A DNA stretch of 46,880 bases from Parasitella parasitica NRRL 2501 (GCA_025201805.1 MU619372.1:29987-76866); one strand, 5' to 3'. Positions 40,906-46,880 are shown, counted from the stretch's first letter. The notes: generated from the sequence alone by a model not told the origin. Numbers and translations: made by a program.

Positions 40906-42215
40906 CTCGAAAATAAGCAATGAAGGAGGAGAGAGGAGAAAAATCACGTCAAGTTTATGAAATTTATAGCTTTTTTTTTTTTTCTTCACATGGAAAAGGG
41001 TGGGCTTGAAATAGTTGTGGCACAAAATGCAATGATTATAAAGGAGATATACGTATATACCATGAACCAAAGCTATTTTTATAACTGCCACAGCAAACTC
41101 TTGTATACGTATTACAAAACAACTTCTGCATTTGTCATCAAGCGCCATATATTGTTTAAAATTTGACTTTTAGGATTTAAAATAAAGAAGGCAACACTAA
41201 AACACAGTTACAATTTGATGATATTTGGTTGATATTTATTTGACAGAAACATGGATGTATATCTGACTTACTAGCAAGAACAGTGTATTGATGAGTAACA
41301 TATGCGCTGTTCATTTAGTATGCCAGAAGGGTAAGTGTACAGACTTTTTATATATTAAGGTTTCCAGTTAGAATCTCCACATGAAGAACTAAATATGAAT
41401 AAGATAGAATCTAGTGTATCAAATTACACACATACTTAATAATTACACAAGAGCCATAACTCTGGAGGGCTGTATTAAAAGATGCGAACACTCTCTGTAT
41501 AATCTTGTTGCTGATCCACATTAAATAATGCTTTTGTGCAAACAAGGTTTCTACCCGAGATACAGAATGATAGCCGCTCCAGATGATGATTGATGCAGTT
41601 TTTATCATCATATCAGAACAATACATTTGGTATAATGTCGGAATTTGAGACAATGATATATTCTTTCAAGTATGATGAATTCGAATACTCTCCGTTGTTG
41701 TAATTATGCTTAAATAATAAAGAACCCGATTTCATAGCATATATGTCAATGGTACGTACACAGAAAAATCTGCTACACAAATTTGATTCAACTATGAATA
41801 TCAAATGCTCATTTTTTAAGACAATTAAGTCAATGTACCCACAATGAAGAGTGATTCTTTGGCATATATATTCCATATTGGCTTTTATTTGAATTAACAC
41901 TTTTACTTAATATGATAAATATCTGAAATAGGATTATCAATCTCTTATGTCTACTTTCATGGATCTTTTGTGCAAAATTTTAATTTGTGTATATATCTGA
42001 TTGAAAAACGAAATAATAAAGAACCTATTTTATCTCAAAAATCTTCTCATATAAAATGGAACCTACTTTTACATCTCTTGTCGTACAATAGCTTTGACAC
42101 TCAACTTCAAAACAATATAAATAGCAGATCATATGTCAAATTGAATAAATCTCATCTTTTAACTGATATATATTTGCCTTATTGAATTTACAATTGTCAC
42201 GACATTCTGAACATG

Positions 42216-42370
42216 TGTCGTGTGCAGAGATGTGTTGCTCTGATAAGTGTATGATAAGTGTATAAAGTATAAAATAAGAGATGAAAGATAGATGATGTTT
42301 ATTCTTTTGTATTTCAATTGATATTTATAATAACTAAAAGTGTACACAAAAAGTCTGCGTGTACCTGACA
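42216..42370 (-). mobile_element. Solo LTR (155 bp) of a Ty3/gypsy family, with 4-bp TSD CATG
   Basis: TG...CA ends (TGTCAGGTAC...CACACGACA on the minus strand). CATG at 42212-42215 and 42371-42374. TATAAATA and AATAAA on the minus strand. Roughly 80% similar by eye to the LTR at 45496-45649. Confidence 0.9.
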
Positions 42371-42437
42371 CATGACACAACTACGAAATTAAGAATAATT
42401 TCAAAACATCTCACGTTAATCAAAATTAAAAAATTGA

Positions 42438-42508
42438 TGCGTATACGGGGAATCGAACCCCGGTCGCCCGCTTGGAAGGCGAGCATTCTGCCACTAAACT
42501 AGACACGC
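42438..42508 (-). tRNA. tRNA-Gly (anticodon TCC), intronless
   Basis: GCGTGTCTAGTTTAGTGGCAGAATGCTCGC-CTTCCAA-GCGGGCGACCGGGGTTCGATTCCCCGTATACGCA; cloverleaf, A and B boxes, and a downstream T6 terminator. Confidence 0.95.
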
Positions 42509-43245
42509 TTTTAGCGATTTGTTACATGCGTATTTTTTCTGTTTTCAACTCACAATATACTATTTGTCAAAAAGGCAACTCATTTTCACGTGATGTTTAT
42601 GAAGAGTCAAGTAATACGTATTTTTAAATTGATTTGAATGCATGTTTATTCTGGAGTCTCAAGTGTTCTGAGGTGAAGGTCAATCTAAATTTAGCCTCTT
42701 ATTTTGGATTATATAATTGTTTTGCCGATGGCTAAATGTTGAAGTTCATGGTTACATTTTGATCTGGGGCATTTATTTTTACTTTGAAATGGAGATTTGA
42801 CAGTTCGATTTGACAGTTTATGATACTTTGAAATTTAGAAAGTAGACATGTAGATGTAGATAGACATTATGAAATCGTATAAAAACGATCATTTTATTTT
42901 TAATAAACCATATCGAATTTTTCTTTCTTTTACACTTTAGTTACTATTGTTATTTTTTCACATTAATTTAACACCAACTACCCTAGATCTTGATTCATTT
43001 TCTCGATGTACAATTTAAATAGCTCTTACAGTCTCCCTATTTACAAACAAATTTATATCACTTTGACTTACCTGCTCACTTACGAAGGTAATCATAAAAG
43101 AGAACTTGACATTTATCAGTTTGTGACAGATGTAAATTGTTTTTGCTGGTGCTAATTGATCATCCGCATGTGATCAGAGTCTGAGCCAATGGAAGCTACG
43201 TTCCTGAATCTGATGTTGAACTCTGGGAACATCTCATCTTAGATA

Positions 43246-44087
43246 TATATATGGAATTATGCGTCATACTTGAAATAAATCGAACTTTCTTACGTTTAAA
43301 ATTCTGTCGTATATAATTATTTGCTATTCTATCGCTGAGATACTATACCATCCTAGTTATTCGACATAATATACACTTAAACAACAGCAAAATAGTCTAA
43401 TTAGTCTCGGCATTGACCTGTTTACTGCAAGTGATCTTTCCAACACATCGCTACAAATGTTAAAAATCTGTACCGCAGAGTATCAAAAGATGATACACGT
43501 TTGTGCTGGTAAATTGTGAAATGAGTTGGTTTTTTTTATGAAGCAATTTGTTCTCCTAAGTTCGAATTGCCGAGATGAAATGTTTGTACAGAGGATATTC
43601 GTATTTGATTGAAGTAGTTGTTCCTAAGGGTTTACTGTTTTTCTGTGATCTGTTCTTCAATTGGAATAGGCAACAATTAATGAAAGCAAATTACGAAAGA
43701 AAAGCTCAATGTTTATTTGAAGATCAACTTCTACTTTTAGCATCTCAGGTACCAAAAGTTTTTGGACAGACTACTTGTGTACCTTCTCATGTCACGTGCT
43801 TCCTTTTTTGGTACTCTGACCATAATTACTCACTTCACGTATCAAACGTGATACTCTGCGGTGCGGGTTTTGTGAAATTGGTAGCGATGTTTTGGAAAGA
43901 TCTTGCAGTGAACAGGTCAATCCCGAGACTAATTAGACTGTTTTGCTGTTGTTTATGCGTATATTATGTCGAATAACTAGGATGGTATGGTATCTCAGCG
44001 ATAGAATAGCAAATTAGTATATATGACAGAATTTTAAACGTAAGAAAGTTCGATTTATTTCAAATATGAAGCATAATTCCCTATATA
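43246..44087. mobile_element. Non-autonomous foldback/MITE-like DNA transposon with ~240-bp terminal inverted repeats (arms 43246-43485 and 43849-44087) in a TA context
   Basis: The left arm TATATATGGAATTATGCGTCATACTTGAAATAAATCGAAC...CCGCAGAGTATCA is the reverse complement, with scattered mismatches, of the right arm ending GCATAATTCCCTATATA. The ~360-bp spacer has no recognisable transposase. Confidence 0.85.
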
Positions 44088-44421
44088 CACTCACTGATAA
44101 TAAATCAACAACCACGGTCACTATTTGTAGTAAATTTAAGAAAAATGAACATATCCTATCTACTTTCAAATTCACGTATCTCTACTATACAGTACTAAGA
44201 TATCCTTCTATAACTTTTACAATGGCTTTACAAGAACGCGATTCAAATATTGTTAAAAGAGTGCAAACTTCTGACTATGATATTGGACGAGTAATTGGGT
44301 TGCATGAGTACGGTGTTCAAGTTCCGCTATCGCCAAGTCCACTGGCATCAAGGAAGGTACTGTGAAGGGTCTGATATACAGATACAAGCACAATGGCTCG
44401 GCACTTCCAGCACAAAGACCT
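44088..44421 (+). mobile_element. 5' fragment of a Tc1/mariner element with a frameshifted transposase N-terminal HTH (ATG 44222)
   Basis: TA|CACTCACTGA... is a Tc1-like terminus. MALQERDSNIVKRVQTSDYDIGRVIGLHEYGV /frameshift/ SSAIAKSTGIKEGTVKGLIYRYKHNGSALPAQRP is a paired-like HTH, cut off at the adjacent LTR. Confidence 0.72.
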
Positions 44422-44882
44422 TATCAGGGATCTACGGCCTTATTAGATAATCAGGGACAGAGTACTAAGAGAAGATATGCAGAAGTTTATTTCAAATAAG
44501 GAGGCTATGATTTAATAAGGGAAAGGTGGAGAAAGATAAGAAGATTGCTAGGGATATTTAATAAGGGAATTCGATGAGGAGATCTCACGAAGAAAACTCT
44601 TCTTTGCTGGTCAAAATGGCCTCTATTTATACTTTTTTGCGAGCTGTCTAGTTCACTGAAATGTGAACTAGACTATTTACTATAACGTGAATCAATTAGG
44701 TAAATAGGATATCGTGGATCAATAAGTCAATAGTATAATGTGGATGAGTAAGGCAAGAATGACAGTGTGAATCAGAGAGGCAAGAATGCAATGTGGATTG
44801 ATTAGGGAAGAACGAGGTGATATATATTTTTAGATCAAGATGTATAATTGTTTGGGCTTGAAGGCTCGACAGGGTCATGACA
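44422..44882 (-). mobile_element. Probable solo LTR (~460 bp) of a second, unrelated retrotransposon family
   Basis: Ends T(A)TCAGGGA...TCATGACA (degenerate TG...CA inverted termini). The minus strand has TATAAATAGAGGCC followed by AATAAA. It begins exactly where the Tc1 ORF is cut. No TSD is visible. Confidence 0.6.
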
Positions 44883-45371
44883 AAAGAACCCCAAACTTGA
44901 TTATAATTGTAATTTCATAACGCTTTTATTTTTACTTTTTTTTTATTTCGTAAATCTTTCAAATTTACTGCATGTAATATGTATGATACGCTGCGGTGCT
45001 TGTTCGTGAAATATTTAGATAGATTTTGGGTACTTTCTAACAAATATACAAGGTGTACGAGGAATGACCTAATATGTTTGGTGTTGCAATAATGTTCTTG
45101 ATAAATTATAGATTTGCGAAGAATCTCAGCAATATAGACCAAATGGATAAAGTATGCTATAAATTATTTAGACGAAAGAAAACCCCTTTTTTATTTAAGC
45201 CATGTGTCGTTTTGACATGTAACCGCTAAAACAATATTTATCATTTAAAACCTTGATTCATTTTTTGTAAAGTCCGTTCAGGAACATCTTCTTATTATGG
45301 TAATTTTCGATTCAAATCCCGAAAATATGGCAGCATCACAAAATTCACTTATACCCGTAACATGTAACAAA

Positions 45372-45442
45372 GCGTGTCTAGTTTAGTGGCAGAATGCTCG
45401 CCTTCCAAGCGGGCGACCGGGGTTCGATTCCCCGTATACGCA
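45372..45442 (+). tRNA. tRNA-Gly (anticodon TCC), identical to the copy at 42438-42508
   Basis: Same 71-nt sequence; T5 terminator at 45446-45450. Confidence 0.95.
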
Positions 45443-45495
45443 TTATTTTTCTCTCGTTAACGTTAGACGTTCTTGAGTAAAGACATGTCAGATAC

Positions 45496-46880
45496 TGTCG
45501 TGTGCAGAGATGTGTTAGTTTTGTGCTGCTTTATTAAGTGTATATAAAATATGAGTAAGAGATGAAAAGATCGATCTTTATTCTTTTGTATTCAAATGAT
45601 ATTTATAATAACTAAAAGTGTTACACACAAAGTCTGTGTGTACCTGCCACTACCACCCTCCCAAAAAAAAGTACAGGTGGACCAGAAAAAGAAAAATTAT
45701 TTAGCTCTAGCAACACGAGGAATATACCAAGATTTCTGTGGTTTTGACCCATCATAACGAACAGCATGCAGACGATCAGTGTGTACCCAAGAGTTATAAA
45801 TTTTTCCATCAATCTCTTGAATTTGGTATGTGTTGTAATCAAGATTGTACTTCAAAATCACATATATATGGACCCATCCAGTTAAATTCCAAGCCTTTTT
45901 TTTATTCATGTCGTAATAGCACGTAATCACCCACTGCAAATGTCTGAGATTTGCCATTTTTCAAAGCAGCATCCCATCGAGCTTTGTCTTTTGAGGCCTG
46001 CAGTATCATCTGCTCTTTTGCTTCAAATCGTTTTTCTCGAAGATCCCTCATACGAGTTAACACGTCTTCCGCTACGAGTTCAGGATCTTCTTCTGTAAAT
46101 GGATCTAAGAAAGGACGACGAGAATCACCAGGTAACACTGGTTCTTGACCATACACCAAAAAGAAAGGGCTATATCCAGTAGTAGCGTGCTTTCGAATCC
46201 GGCAAGAGAACAAGGCAGAATCAACATATTCATCCCAAGAGTGCACCATACCTTTAACATATTTTGTCAGCATATGTTTGAATGTTTGGTTAAGCCTTTC
46301 GCACTTTGAGTTTGTTCTTGGATGAAACGCGGACGTAAACATGTGTTTTGATCGAATTTTGTGCATGTACTGCTTCAGGATTTTGCTCAAAAAGTTGGCA
46401 CCACGATCCGATACCAGCTCGACAGGACACCCAAACTTCACTACTATCTCTTCATATAAAAATTTCACAATCTCAGCAGCAGAAGCGGAATTCAACGCAC
46501 GAGCAATGGGCCAGTTTGTAGCGTAGTCAACCGCCATAATTATCCATCGATTGCCATTGTTCGTAAGAGGAAGTTCGCCAATGAAGTCAATATGCCAACG
46601 CGCAAATGGGGCTGGAACCTCTAACGGTTTCATTGGAGCGTGATGAATCGCTTTTTCAGAGCGCAAATGGAGCTGGCATTCAGGGCAGGTTTTTAGCCAG
46701 TAATTAATATCCTTTCGCATTGAGGGCCACCATACCCGTTGCTTCATCAAGTGATACACAGTTAGCTGTCCCGAGTGACCAAATCCACGATGAAAATCTT
46801 CGATAAGATCAGCACGGCGAGCAAATGGTATGAATTTCAGTTTTGAAGCTTCTCTACTACTAGCTGTTGGTTCTGGGTTT
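45496..46880 (-). mobile_element. 3' part of a Ty3/gypsy LTR retrotransposon: integrase, PPT (45650-45662) and 3' LTR (45496-45649); continues beyond the window
   Basis: On the minus strand the integrase is last in pol, followed by GGGAGGGTGGTAG (PPT) abutting the LTR TGGCAGGTAC...CACACGACA. Confidence 0.93.
45697..46880 (-). pseudogene. Retrotransposon integrase (HHCC, DDE, GPY/F) with a premature stop at ~45902 and a frameshift at ~45865
   Basis: FHRGFGH...CPECQ, WHIDFIG, VSDRGANF, HPRTNSKCERLN, TGYSPFFLVYG, then LRHE*KKGLEFNWMGPY /frameshift/ VILKYNLDYNTYQI...VHTDRL...ARAK*. No chromodomain. Confidence 0.88.

What the first reader, a model, noticed from the sequence alone, without database searches (positions are those of the whole stretch)
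42212..45662. Ty3/gypsy family that appears to target the 3' side of tRNA genes: two independent insertions 53 and 67 bp downstream of two tRNA-Gly genes
Seen in the sequence: both tRNA genes have an LTR of the same ~155-bp family just past their terminator. The solo LTR at 42216-42370 is 67 bp 3' of the minus-strand tRNA and in the same orientation. The LTR at 45496-45649 is 53 bp 3' of the plus-strand tRNA and in the opposite orientation. The insertions look independent: different distance, different relative orientation, different flanking bases, diverged LTRs, and the solo has its own CATG TSD. I saw no other copy in the window. Established: yeast Ty1 and Ty3 insert upstream of Pol III genes, and downstream targeting is known from dictyostelid elements such as TRE3. 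Inference: a tRNA-3'-targeting LTR retrotransposon in a Mucorales fungus, which I do not recall being described; n=2 at a single locus.
Basis: partly seen in the sequence, partly recalled or inferred. Interest (0 to 1): 0.85.

Follow-up and report, generated by a model that had tools for sequence, protein, structure and literature searches.

The report
LTR retrotransposons landing just downstream of tRNA genes
In this Mucor-like fungus, a group of Ty3/gypsy retrotransposons inserts almost only into a narrow strip about 35-75 bp past the 3' end of tRNA genes (and once past a U6 gene), a habit so far described only in social amoebae.

Summary

- **What is in the window.** Both tRNA-Gly(TCC) genes and both ~155-bp LTRs sit where stated, 67 and 53 bp past the tRNA 3' ends. 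Each insertion has its own 4-bp target-site duplication (TSD): CATG and ATAC.
- **Genome-wide pattern.** The LTR family occupies about 37 places in the 32.8-Mb genome. In 26 of them it lies 12-186 bp downstream of a tRNA gene (median 54) and never upstream. At least 16 isotypes are hit, in both orientations. One further copy lies 31 bp downstream of a U6 snRNA gene.
- **Related families.** Two related LTR families, B and C, show the same habit.
- **Sample chosen without regard to LTRs.** Of 56 tRNA genes picked by tRNA score alone, 29 carry such an LTR downstream and none carries a real one upstream.
- **Proof of transposition.** A filled and an empty paralogous site show a precise insertion with TSD CTAC.
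- **Element anatomy.** LTR, a primer-binding site matching initiator tRNA-Met, gag, protease, reverse transcriptase, integrase, polypurine tract, LTR. There is no chromodomain.
- **Other genomes.** Mucor circinelloides and one other related assembly show the same arrangement.
- **Prior literature.** Downstream targeting is described for the dictyostelid elements Skipper-2 and TRE3. A Rhizopus genome paper noted only that Ty3/gypsy elements co-localise with tRNA genes.

The host factor that guides integration is unknown. Earlier notes of this scan on other DNA of this genome report LINEs upstream of tRNA genes; none shown to me covers this downstream family.

The parts
42079..42204 (.). Solo LTR of related family C (126 bp, TGTCGTACAAT...TTGTCACGACA). 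Its flanks are CTCT/TTCT. Before the family-A LTR arrived it lay about 74 bp past tRNA-Gly(-).
   Evidence: BLAST of this stretch finds copies 55-99 bp downstream of four other tRNAs and at the U6 locus. Sequence read.
42212..42215 (.). Left copy of the 4-bp target-site duplication CATG of the solo LTR.
42216..42370 (-). Solo LTR of family A (155 bp, TG...CA). The element sense is the minus strand. It lies 67 bp past the 3' end of tRNA-Gly(-), in the same orientation.
   Evidence: Contigs of four public runs bridge its left junction.
42371..42374 (.). Right copy of the TSD CATG.
42405..42414 (-). Downstream box 1 (GTGAGATGTT) in the spacer, 24 nt past the tRNA end.
42438..42508 (-). tRNA-Gly(TCC) gene.
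   Evidence: ARAGORN; Rfam RF00005, 55.3 bits.
42518..45363 (.). The interval between the two tRNA genes. It is built of repeats that also abut the 5' side of unrelated tRNA genes, ending 8-10 bp from the tRNA 5' end. These are separate, upstream-inserting element families and not part of the LTR family.
   Evidence: BLAST against upstream flanks of 41 tRNAs.
45372..45442 (+). tRNA-Gly(TCC) gene.
45462..45471 (+). Downstream box 1 variant (GTTAGACGTT), 20 nt past the tRNA end.
45492..45495 (.). TSD ATAC of the long element. Its partner lies outside the window at L010:2616-2619 (contig C136:85902-85905).
45496..45649 (-). 3' LTR (154 bp) of a minus-strand family-A element, 53 bp past tRNA-Gly(+), in the opposite orientation. 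The 5' LTR is at C136:85787-85901 (L010:2501-2615) and differs at 3 of 115 readable bases.
45650..45662 (-). Polypurine tract GGGAGGGTGGTAG, directly 5' of the 3' LTR in element sense.
   Evidence: Sequence read.
45697..46880 (-). 3' part of pol: integrase (Integrase_H2C2 and rve in ORF 45902-46759), then a GPY/F-type C-terminal region broken by two frame changes (an A-run near 45925 and an AT-run near 45862), then a short tail ...KSWYIPRVARAK. There is no chromodomain. The element runs off the window's right end.
   Evidence: Contigs of four other runs differ by 4 letters at 45862.

Best explanation
A group of closely related Ty3/gypsy-order LTR retrotransposons (LTR families A, B and C, 126-155 bp, termini TGTCGT...ACGACA, 4-bp TSD) integrates selectively into a strip about 35-75 bp past the 3' end of RNA polymerase III genes. 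Its primer-binding site matches initiator tRNA-Met and its integrase has no chromodomain. The full range of distances is 12 to about 190 bp. The targets are all kinds of tRNA genes and at least one U6 gene, and the element can land in either orientation.

Shown: the element anatomy, the TSDs, the side and distance distribution, repeated independent hits at the same tRNA, one filled/empty site pair, and the same arrangement in two related genomes.

Inferred: the integrase is tethered by a protein of the Pol III transcription complex that marks the terminator end of the gene. The candidates are TFIIIC on the B box, or Pol III itself with its termination factors. My rough odds are one third each, with the rest going to a positioned downstream nucleosome or another factor. 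The tether would place the intasome on the first accessible DNA beyond the terminator. The short conserved integrase tail (...WYIPRxARAK) is the best candidate for the contact.
For: - **Family places.** The family-A LTR hits at least 58 segments in about 37 places. In 26 places a tRNA lies next to it and the LTR is always on the tRNA's 3' side. The median distance is 53.5 bp and the interquartile range 40-66.5.
- **U6.** A complete solo LTR with TSD CTCT lies 31 bp past a U6 gene scoring 85 bits against Rfam. A family-C LTR lies behind it.
- **Sample chosen by tRNA score only.** 15 tRNAs carry family A, 12 more carry family B or related LTRs and 2 more carry family C only. That is 29 of 56 downstream against 0 real upstream. 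The sign test at the stage (27 against 1) gave p = 2e-7.
- **TSDs.** Twelve perfect 4-bp TSDs, all different.
- **Filled versus empty site.** L050 carries a family-B LTR with TSD CTAC 65 bp past tRNA-Lys. Its paralogue L049 has a single CTAC and no LTR.
- **Repeated hits.** The window's element landed 3 bp from an older family-B solo LTR that has its own TSD, CACA. New LTRs sit inside the first 9 nt of older ones at L012, L013 and L019.
- **Anatomy.** The PBS matches 12 nt of the genome's initiator tRNA-Met 3' end. Retrotrans_gag, zf-CCHC, aspartyl protease and RVT_1 are found, then Integrase_H2C2 and rve. Ty3 is the best match among solved structures, E 5e-27.
- **Other genomes.** In Mucor circinelloides an IN plus LTR lies 105 bp past tRNA-Val. 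In a JGI assembly, LTRs lie 66 bp past tRNA-Asp and 23 bp past tRNA-Ala.
Against: - Ten of the 37 places show no Pol III gene in view. About half are the far LTRs of long elements or abut assembly gaps. At least L014, L018 and L031 look like true exceptions.
- The assembly is fragmented and full of N runs, so no complete copy could be read and the copy counts are lower bounds.
- No de novo integration has been observed. Four other public runs all carry the window's solo LTR, so no polymorphic empty site was found.
- The tether is pure inference.
- No B-box-like sequence was found around the U6 gene. This speaks against TFIIIC as the only landmark, though it rests on a single locus.
- Single copies of more distant relatives in Lichtheimia, Parasitella and Rhizopus microsporus were not next to tRNAs.
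Confidence: 0.88

Rival explanations
1. DNA-sequence-directed insertion. The integrase recognises a DNA feature of the tRNA 3' flank rather than the Pol III machinery. The feature could be the two conserved downstream boxes (GTGAGACGTT, or a TGTGGTGTGTGTAGA-like box) or the T-rich terminator region.
For: The boxes occur at +15 to +32 in 42 of 71 tRNA loci. They are orientation-specific and absent from upstream flanks. In every box-bearing locus the LTR lies distal to the box, sometimes only 1-5 nt beyond it.
Against: Many LTR-bearing loci have no box, for example L006, L007, L011-L013, L017, L019, L063 and L067. The U6 spacer has none. The distance from box to LTR varies from 1 to about 40 nt. 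The 12 TSDs share no consensus.
Confidence: 0.07
2. Random integration followed by selection. Copies survive only in harmless places, and tRNA 3' flanks happen to be such places.
For: The genome is compact. Other element families pile up on the 5' side of the same tRNA genes, so tRNA surroundings are evidently tolerated.
Against: Selection alone cannot explain the strict one-sidedness (29 downstream against 0 upstream), the narrow 35-75 bp peak, or nested hits a few bp apart. It also cannot explain why the family is absent from the upstream flanks, which tolerate other elements.
Confidence: 0.03
3. Co-duplication. tRNA genes were copied together with an adjacent LTR, so the association reflects a few old events.
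For: Some tRNA paralogues share flanks: L049/L050, L068/L069 and L060/L061.
Against: At least 16 isotypes are involved, with unrelated spacers, different TSDs, both orientations and three LTR families. The L049/L050 paralogue pair differs precisely by the LTR plus one TSD copy.
Confidence: 0.01

Closest known systems
Skipper-2 (formerly DGLT-P) of dictyostelid social amoebae. A Ty3/gypsy chromovirus found 7-136 bp downstream of tRNA genes (Spaller et al. 2016, PMC5006619).
   Same: It is an LTR retrotransposon of Ty3/gypsy order. It is found in a window of tens of bp to about 140 bp past tRNA genes. It lives in a compact genome where other elements take the upstream side.
   Different: Skipper-2 carries a diverged (group II) chromodomain in a 99-192-aa integrase extension, and many Skipper elements lack a canonical PBS. 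The element here has no chromodomain. It has only about a 25-aa tail after the GPY/F region and a canonical 12-nt initiator-tRNA PBS. The host is a fungus, not an amoeba, so the habit probably arose independently.
TRE3 non-LTR retrotransposons of Dictyostelium. They insert 40-150 bp downstream of tRNA genes (review PMC5911963).
   Same: The same side and a similar distance window. TRE3 coexists with upstream-targeting TRE5, as the LTR families here coexist with upstream repeats.
   Different: TRE3 is a LINE-type element without LTRs or integrase, and it inserts in one orientation relative to the tRNA. It uses the internal or an external B box as landmark. No external B box was seen here.
Ty3 of Saccharomyces cerevisiae, and other fungal Pol III-targeting Ty3/gypsy elements (Tj1, Tca8/beta, Tyl3, Ylt1, Tyl6).
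   Same: Ty3/gypsy order and an initiator-tRNA PBS. The integrase has no chromodomain. Ty3 is the best match among solved structures (7q5b). The targets are Pol III genes, including non-tRNA ones.
   Different: All of them insert upstream, 1-30 bp from the transcription start, through TFIIIB. Ty3 makes 5-bp TSDs. The element here inserts only downstream and makes 4-bp TSDs.
[quoted passage not shown] 2009, PMC2699053).
   Same: The same fungal order, the same element class and an association with tRNA genes. Integrase homologues occur in Rhizopus.
   Different: That paper gives one sentence and a chromosome-scale figure, with no side, distance, TSD or element description. The single R. microsporus copy examined here was uninformative.

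Membership tests
Ty3/gypsy (Metaviridae) LTR retrotransposons | LTRs with TG...CA termini flanked by a short target-site duplication | tested here: met
   Twelve LTR insertions with perfect 4-bp TSDs.
Ty3/gypsy (Metaviridae) LTR retrotransposons | Gene order gag - protease - RT - RNase H - integrase, with the integrase last and next to the PPT and 3' LTR | tested here: met
   gag, zf-CCHC, PR and RVT_1 occur in that order after the 5' LTR in L037. Integrase_H2C2 and rve lie directly before the PPT and 3' LTR in the window. RNase H was not readable in this genome because of N runs, but homologues carry RT_RNaseH fused upstream of the integrase (P0027, P0044).
Ty3/gypsy (Metaviridae) LTR retrotransposons | tRNA-complementary primer-binding site next to the 5' LTR | tested here: met
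   TGGTAGCATCTG lies 2 nt after the 5' LTR. It equals the complement of the last 12 nt (with CCA) of this genome's initiator tRNA-Met.
Ty3/gypsy (Metaviridae) LTR retrotransposons | RT or IN phylogeny placing it inside the group | tested here: inconclusive
   No tree was built. The support is that Ty3 Gag-Pol is the best PDB match (E 5e-27) and that Integrase_H2C2 is present.
Chromoviruses / Skipper-2 | Chromodomain, canonical or group II, at the integrase C-terminus | tested here: not met
   Pfam finds no Chromo in the window's C-terminal pieces or in the intact homologues P0001, P0004 and P0010. The protein ends about 25 aa after the GPY/F region.
Pol III gene-targeting retrotransposons (functional class) | Copies concentrated at a fixed side and distance from Pol III genes of many kinds | tested here: met
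   26 tRNA places and 1 U6 place out of 37, all downstream, median 54 bp. 29 of 56 independently sampled tRNAs are occupied.
Pol III gene-targeting retrotransposons (functional class) | De novo integration depends on an active Pol III complex or a defined partner protein | not testable with these tools
   This needs integration-site profiling and protein-binding experiments.
TRE3 (Dictyostelium) | Non-LTR (LINE) structure with APE/RT and a poly(A) tail | tested here: not met
   The element has LTRs, a PBS, a PPT and an integrase.

The most novel reading that the evidence does not exclude
Mucor-type fungi have evolved, independently of dictyostelids, a complete 'tRNA gene as landing pad' system, with different retroelement families each owning one side of the gene. 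The downstream LTR families would reach their strip through a new tether: a short C-terminal integrase peptide (...WYIPRxARAK) instead of a chromodomain. That peptide would bind a factor at the terminator end of Pol III genes, possibly the same factor that recognises the conserved, previously undescribed downstream boxes (GTGAGACGTT and TGTGGTGTGTGTAGA-like) found 15-32 nt past most tRNA genes.
Probability: 0.2. Interest if true: 0.85.

Novelty: new variant of a known kind. Interest (0 to 1): 0.66.

Why it matters
Every fungal retrotransposon known to aim at Pol III genes (Ty1-Ty4, Tj1, Tca8, the Yarrowia elements) lands upstream. The 2018 review (PMC5911963) states that downstream insertion is found only in dictyostelids. 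A fungal Ty3/gypsy lineage with strict downstream specificity and no chromodomain would be a further independent origin of this strategy, after TRE3 and Skipper-2.

It also occurs in a group (Mucor) with workable genetics, RNAi mutants and long-read assemblies. The question of what marks the 3' side of a Pol III gene for an integrase therefore becomes testable.

Practically, about half of the sampled tRNA genes carry these LTRs, which explains many assembly breaks. The LTR presence/absence sites could serve as strain markers in Mucorales. The conserved downstream boxes may point to an unknown element of tRNA gene architecture in these fungi.

Tried and rejected
- **Empty sites in other strains.** Four runs from four studies all carry the left junction of the window's solo LTR. 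Contigs break at the tRNA and LTR repeats, so the right-hand insertion could not be judged. No polymorphism was shown.
- **Primer tRNA by exact 13-mer.** The search found only element copies. The primer was then identified through the initiator-tRNA anticodon arm, and the true match is 12 nt.
- **Low-threshold ARAGORN on the ten places without a tRNA.** It gave only implausible calls with giant introns, so they were rejected. The Rfam gathering search on the same loci found only the U6 gene and a distant tRNA-Asp.
- **B-box-like pattern around the U6 gene.** Nothing was found.
- **A complete element.** None could be read. The interior of the window's element and most other copies are interrupted by N runs.
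- **Remaining sampled tRNAs.** I did not try to obtain them another way.
- **More distant relatives.** Lichtheimia corymbifera (L089, L091), Parasitella (L092), Rhizopus microsporus (L093), Circinella (L095) and two ENA contigs (L094, L096; L094 ends in a fold-back assembly artefact) were examined. None had an adjacent tRNA or enough flank. One copy each says little either way.
- **Other ideas set aside.** A single non-autonomous element bounded by the two window LTRs is rejected, because each LTR has its own TSD and the right one continues into pol. An inverted segmental duplication of tRNA plus LTR is rejected, because the tRNAs are inverted while the LTRs are direct.
Full report
**Observation.**
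- ARAGORN finds exactly two tRNA genes in the window, both tRNA-Gly(TCC): 42438-42508 on the minus strand and 45372-45442 on the plus strand.
- The stretches 42216-42370 and 45496-45649 are direct repeats that are 82.5% identical. They begin with TG and end with CA.
- The left one is a solo LTR flanked by CATG on both sides.
- The right one is followed, on the minus strand, by the polypurine tract GGGAGGGTGGTAG and an open frame with Integrase_H2C2 and rve domains. It is therefore the 3' LTR of a minus-strand element that runs off the window.
- The distances to the tRNA 3' ends are 67 and 53 bp. The relative orientations are 'same' for the solo LTR and 'opposite' for the element.
- The exception: a related 126-bp solo LTR (family C, TGTCGTACAAT...TTGTCACGACA) lies at 42079-42204, 11 bp from the solo LTR.

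**The window's long element.**
- The window is contig C136:29987-76866 of a 32.8-Mb, 450-contig assembly.
- The element's 5' LTR is at C136:85787-85901 (L010:2501-2615). It is followed by ATAC, the same four bases that precede the 3' LTR at 45492-45495. This is one insertion with TSD ATAC.
- Its two LTRs differ at 3 of 115 readable positions.
- Three bases beyond it lies an older solo LTR of a sister family (family B, L010:2623-2777) with its own TSD, CACA.
- Each tRNA-Gly gene has therefore been hit at least twice, independently, within the same short strip.

**Genome-wide test.**
- The 154-bp LTR matches at least 58 segments in about 37 places. I fetched the flanks, called tRNAs with ARAGORN and placed the LTR hits with BLASTN.
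- In 26 places a tRNA gene lies beside the LTR, and in all 26 the LTR is on the 3' side of the tRNA.
- The nearest-edge distances are 12, 35, 35, 36, 37, 38, 38, 46, 48, 49, 49, 50, 53, 54, 55, 57, 59, 62, 65, 67, 69, 72, 75, 93, 104 and 186 bp. The median is 53.5 and the interquartile range 40-66.5. The 186 shrinks to 55 once family C is counted.
- At least 16 isotypes are involved: Gly, Lys, Ser, Asn, Leu, Ala, Ile, Pro, Glu, Arg, Trp, Val, His, Thr, Gln and Phe.
- Both orientations occur, 9 same and 17 opposite, which is not significantly biased (p = 0.17).
- One more place (L034) has a complete solo LTR with TSD CTCT 31 bp past a U6 snRNA gene (Rfam 85 bits against a gathering score of 44). 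A family-C LTR lies just behind it.
- I allowed that as much as 0.9% of the genome lies within 200 bp downstream of a tRNA. That uses all 1435 raw candidates as if they were genes. On that basis a count of 28 of 37 places has a binomial p of about 6e-50. The true count is 27, which does not change the conclusion.

**A sample not chosen through the LTR.**
- The Rfam tRNA model, run on the whole genome, returned its 63 best-scoring tRNA genes.
- Fifteen of them have a family-A LTR 13-200 bp downstream, by coordinates alone.
- I fetched 41 of the other 48.
- Twelve of these 41 carry a family-B or related LTR, starting 36-242 bp downstream. Two upstream hits are not real: one is the spacer shared with a neighbouring tRNA's 3' side and the other is a 44-nt match at E = 8e-4.
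- Family C adds two more tRNAs.
- In total, 29 of 56 sampled tRNA genes carry an LTR of this group downstream, and none carries one upstream.

**Direct evidence of transposition.**
- Twelve insertions have perfect 4-bp duplications, all different: CATG, ATAC, CACA, ATTA, CATC, AAAT, CTGG, CAAT, CGTG, TGTG, CTAC and CTCT.
- Two paralogous tRNA-Lys(TTT) loci have nearly identical flanks. L050 carries a family-B LTR between two CTAC copies, 65 bp past the tRNA. L049 has a single CTAC and no LTR.
- At L012, L013 and L019, new LTRs sit inside the first 9 nt of older ones. This is what is expected if the insertion point is measured from the tRNA gene and not from any sequence.

**Anatomy of the element.**
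- No complete copy is readable, because the assembly has many N runs inside the elements.
- From separate copies: the 5' LTR is followed, after 2 nt, by TGGTAGCATCTG. This is complementary to the last 12 nt, including CCA, of this genome's initiator tRNA-Met.
- Next comes an open frame with Retrotrans_gag, a CCHC zinc knuckle and an aspartyl protease, and then RVT_1 (L037).
- At the other end lie Integrase_H2C2 and rve, a GPY/F-type C-terminal region, the polypurine tract and the 3' LTR.
- In the window's copy, the frame is broken twice in the integrase C-terminal region, at an A-run and at an AT-run. Contigs of four other runs differ in length by 4 letters at the AT-run.
- Intact homologues end about 25 residues after the GPY/F region with a conserved tail...SWYIPR(I/T/V)AR.... 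They have no chromodomain.
- The best match among solved structures is the Ty3 Gag-Pol polyprotein of the Ty3 intasome entry 7q5b (E 5e-27).

**Host and relatives.**
- All named integrase homologues come from Mucorales: Rhizopus, Lichtheimia, Parasitella, Circinella and Mucor.
- Two host genes of Mucor circinelloides match contig C31 of this genome, collinearly, at 74-85% DNA identity. 'A Mucorales fungus' is therefore right, and it is probably a Mucor relative.
- In M. circinelloides, an integrase fragment plus LTR lies 105 bp past tRNA-Val (L090).
- In a JGI assembly whose integrase is 94% identical over the matched part (38% of the query), LTRs lie 66 bp past tRNA-Asp and 23 bp past tRNA-Ala (L088).
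- Single copies of more distant relatives in Lichtheimia, Parasitella, R. microsporus, Circinella and two ENA contigs were not next to tRNAs or lacked enough flank.

**Exceptions.**
- Ten of the 37 places show no Pol III gene.
- L010 is the far end of the window's element.
- L002, L004, L008 and L015 are LTRs attached to internal sequence whose other end is not assembled.
- L022 and L025 abut a contig start or an N run.
- L014 (TSD CAAT), L018 and L031 look like real off-target solo LTRs.

**How it most likely works.**
- The strict side, the narrow window, the lack of a target consensus, the free orientation and the inclusion of U6 point to a tethered integrase. It would be held by a protein that marks the terminator end of Pol III units, and it would cut the first accessible DNA beyond that end.
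- The U6 insertion is 31 bp past the gene's end, close to the tRNA values, although U6 is longer and no B-box-like sequence is seen around it. This slightly favours a landmark at the terminator (Pol III or its termination factors) over the B box and TFIIIC, but it rests on a single locus.
- The conserved C-terminal tail is the obvious candidate contact. None of this is shown.

**Rival explanations.**
- Recognition of a DNA motif is unlikely. Two conserved boxes do exist in the spacer (see below), but many occupied loci and the U6 locus lack them.
- Survival by selection cannot give a one-sided, 40-bp-wide peak.
- Co-duplication is excluded by the different spacers, TSDs, isotypes and orientations.

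**Comparison with the literature.**
- Spaller et al. 2016 (PMC5006619) describe Skipper-2, a dictyostelid chromovirus found 7-136 bp downstream of tRNA genes. They call this preference previously unobserved for an LTR element.
- The review by Cheung et al. 2018 (PMC5911963) lists all fungal Pol III-targeting elements as upstream. It states that downstream insertion is found only in dictyostelids (TRE3, Skipper-2).
- Ma et al. 2009 (PMC2699053) say that R. oryzae Ty3/gypsy elements 'often co-localize with tRNA genes', without giving side or distance.
- Four further full-text searches found no description of downstream targeting in Mucorales or any other fungus. The library does not hold most subscription journals.
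- I therefore rate this a new variant of a known kind. The strategy is the same as that of Skipper-2 and TRE3, but the kingdom differs, there is no chromodomain, the PBS is canonical, and the tether is probably different.

**Earlier notes of this scan.** Notes on other pieces of this genome report LINE-like elements just upstream of tRNA genes. My flank comparison agrees that unrelated tRNAs share upstream repeats ending 8-10 bp from the gene. I did not test what those repeats are.

Noticed in passing
window 42405-42414 (-) and 45462-45471 (+); loci L048-L087 and others: Two short, orientation-specific boxes lie 15-32 nt past the 3' end of tRNA genes, beyond the first T-run. Box 1 is GTGAGACGTT (18 of 71 loci: Lys, Thr-AGT, Gly, Asn, Arg-ACG). 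Box 2 is TGTGGTGTGTGTAGA-like (24 of 71: Trp, Cys, Phe, Gln, Ile, iMet, His, Ser, Pro, Asp, Tyr). Box 1 is absent from the upstream flanks on both strands and from the reverse strand of the downstream flanks. Box 2 has one reverse-strand match in the upstream flanks and none elsewhere. Shuffled flanks give 0.2-0.4 matches on average. The boxes are kept per isotype in other Mucor genomes; tRNA-Val has box 1 inverted both here and in M. circinelloides. Their function is unknown.
   Followed up: partly
window 42518-45363: The whole 2.9-kb interval between the two tRNA-Gly genes consists of repeats that also abut the 5' side of unrelated tRNA genes, ending 8-10 bp from the tRNA start. Window 42518-43122 resembles the upstream flanks of L081/L064, 44984-45363 those of L060/L085, and 43122-43485 plus 43838-44087 those of L048/L051. 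Of 41 sampled tRNAs, 32 share upstream repeats. These are probably separate upstream-targeting retroelements, as earlier scan notes suggest.
   Followed up: partly
window 43246-43431 and 43902-44087: A 186-nt inverted repeat, 94% complementary, with 470 nt between the arms. It lies inside the upstream-repeat stack. It may be two copies of an upstream element inserted head to head, or a foldback element.
   Followed up: no
L088:17723-18793, L089:5878-7252, L096:10844-11833: DNA transposase genes (DDE_Tnp_IS1595, Tc3/DDE_3) lie near the LTR elements in several Mucorales contigs. These regions seem to collect transposons of several classes.
   Followed up: no
L045 (G000:C2:321459-324471): One of the three initiator tRNA-Met genes, which is the element's own primer tRNA, carries a short (~95 bp) related LTR 54 bp downstream.
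   Followed up: partly
L094:9220-9300 (ENA contig ctg156439): The contig turns into its own reverse complement inside the 3' LTR of a related element. This is a fold-back assembly artefact.
   Followed up: no
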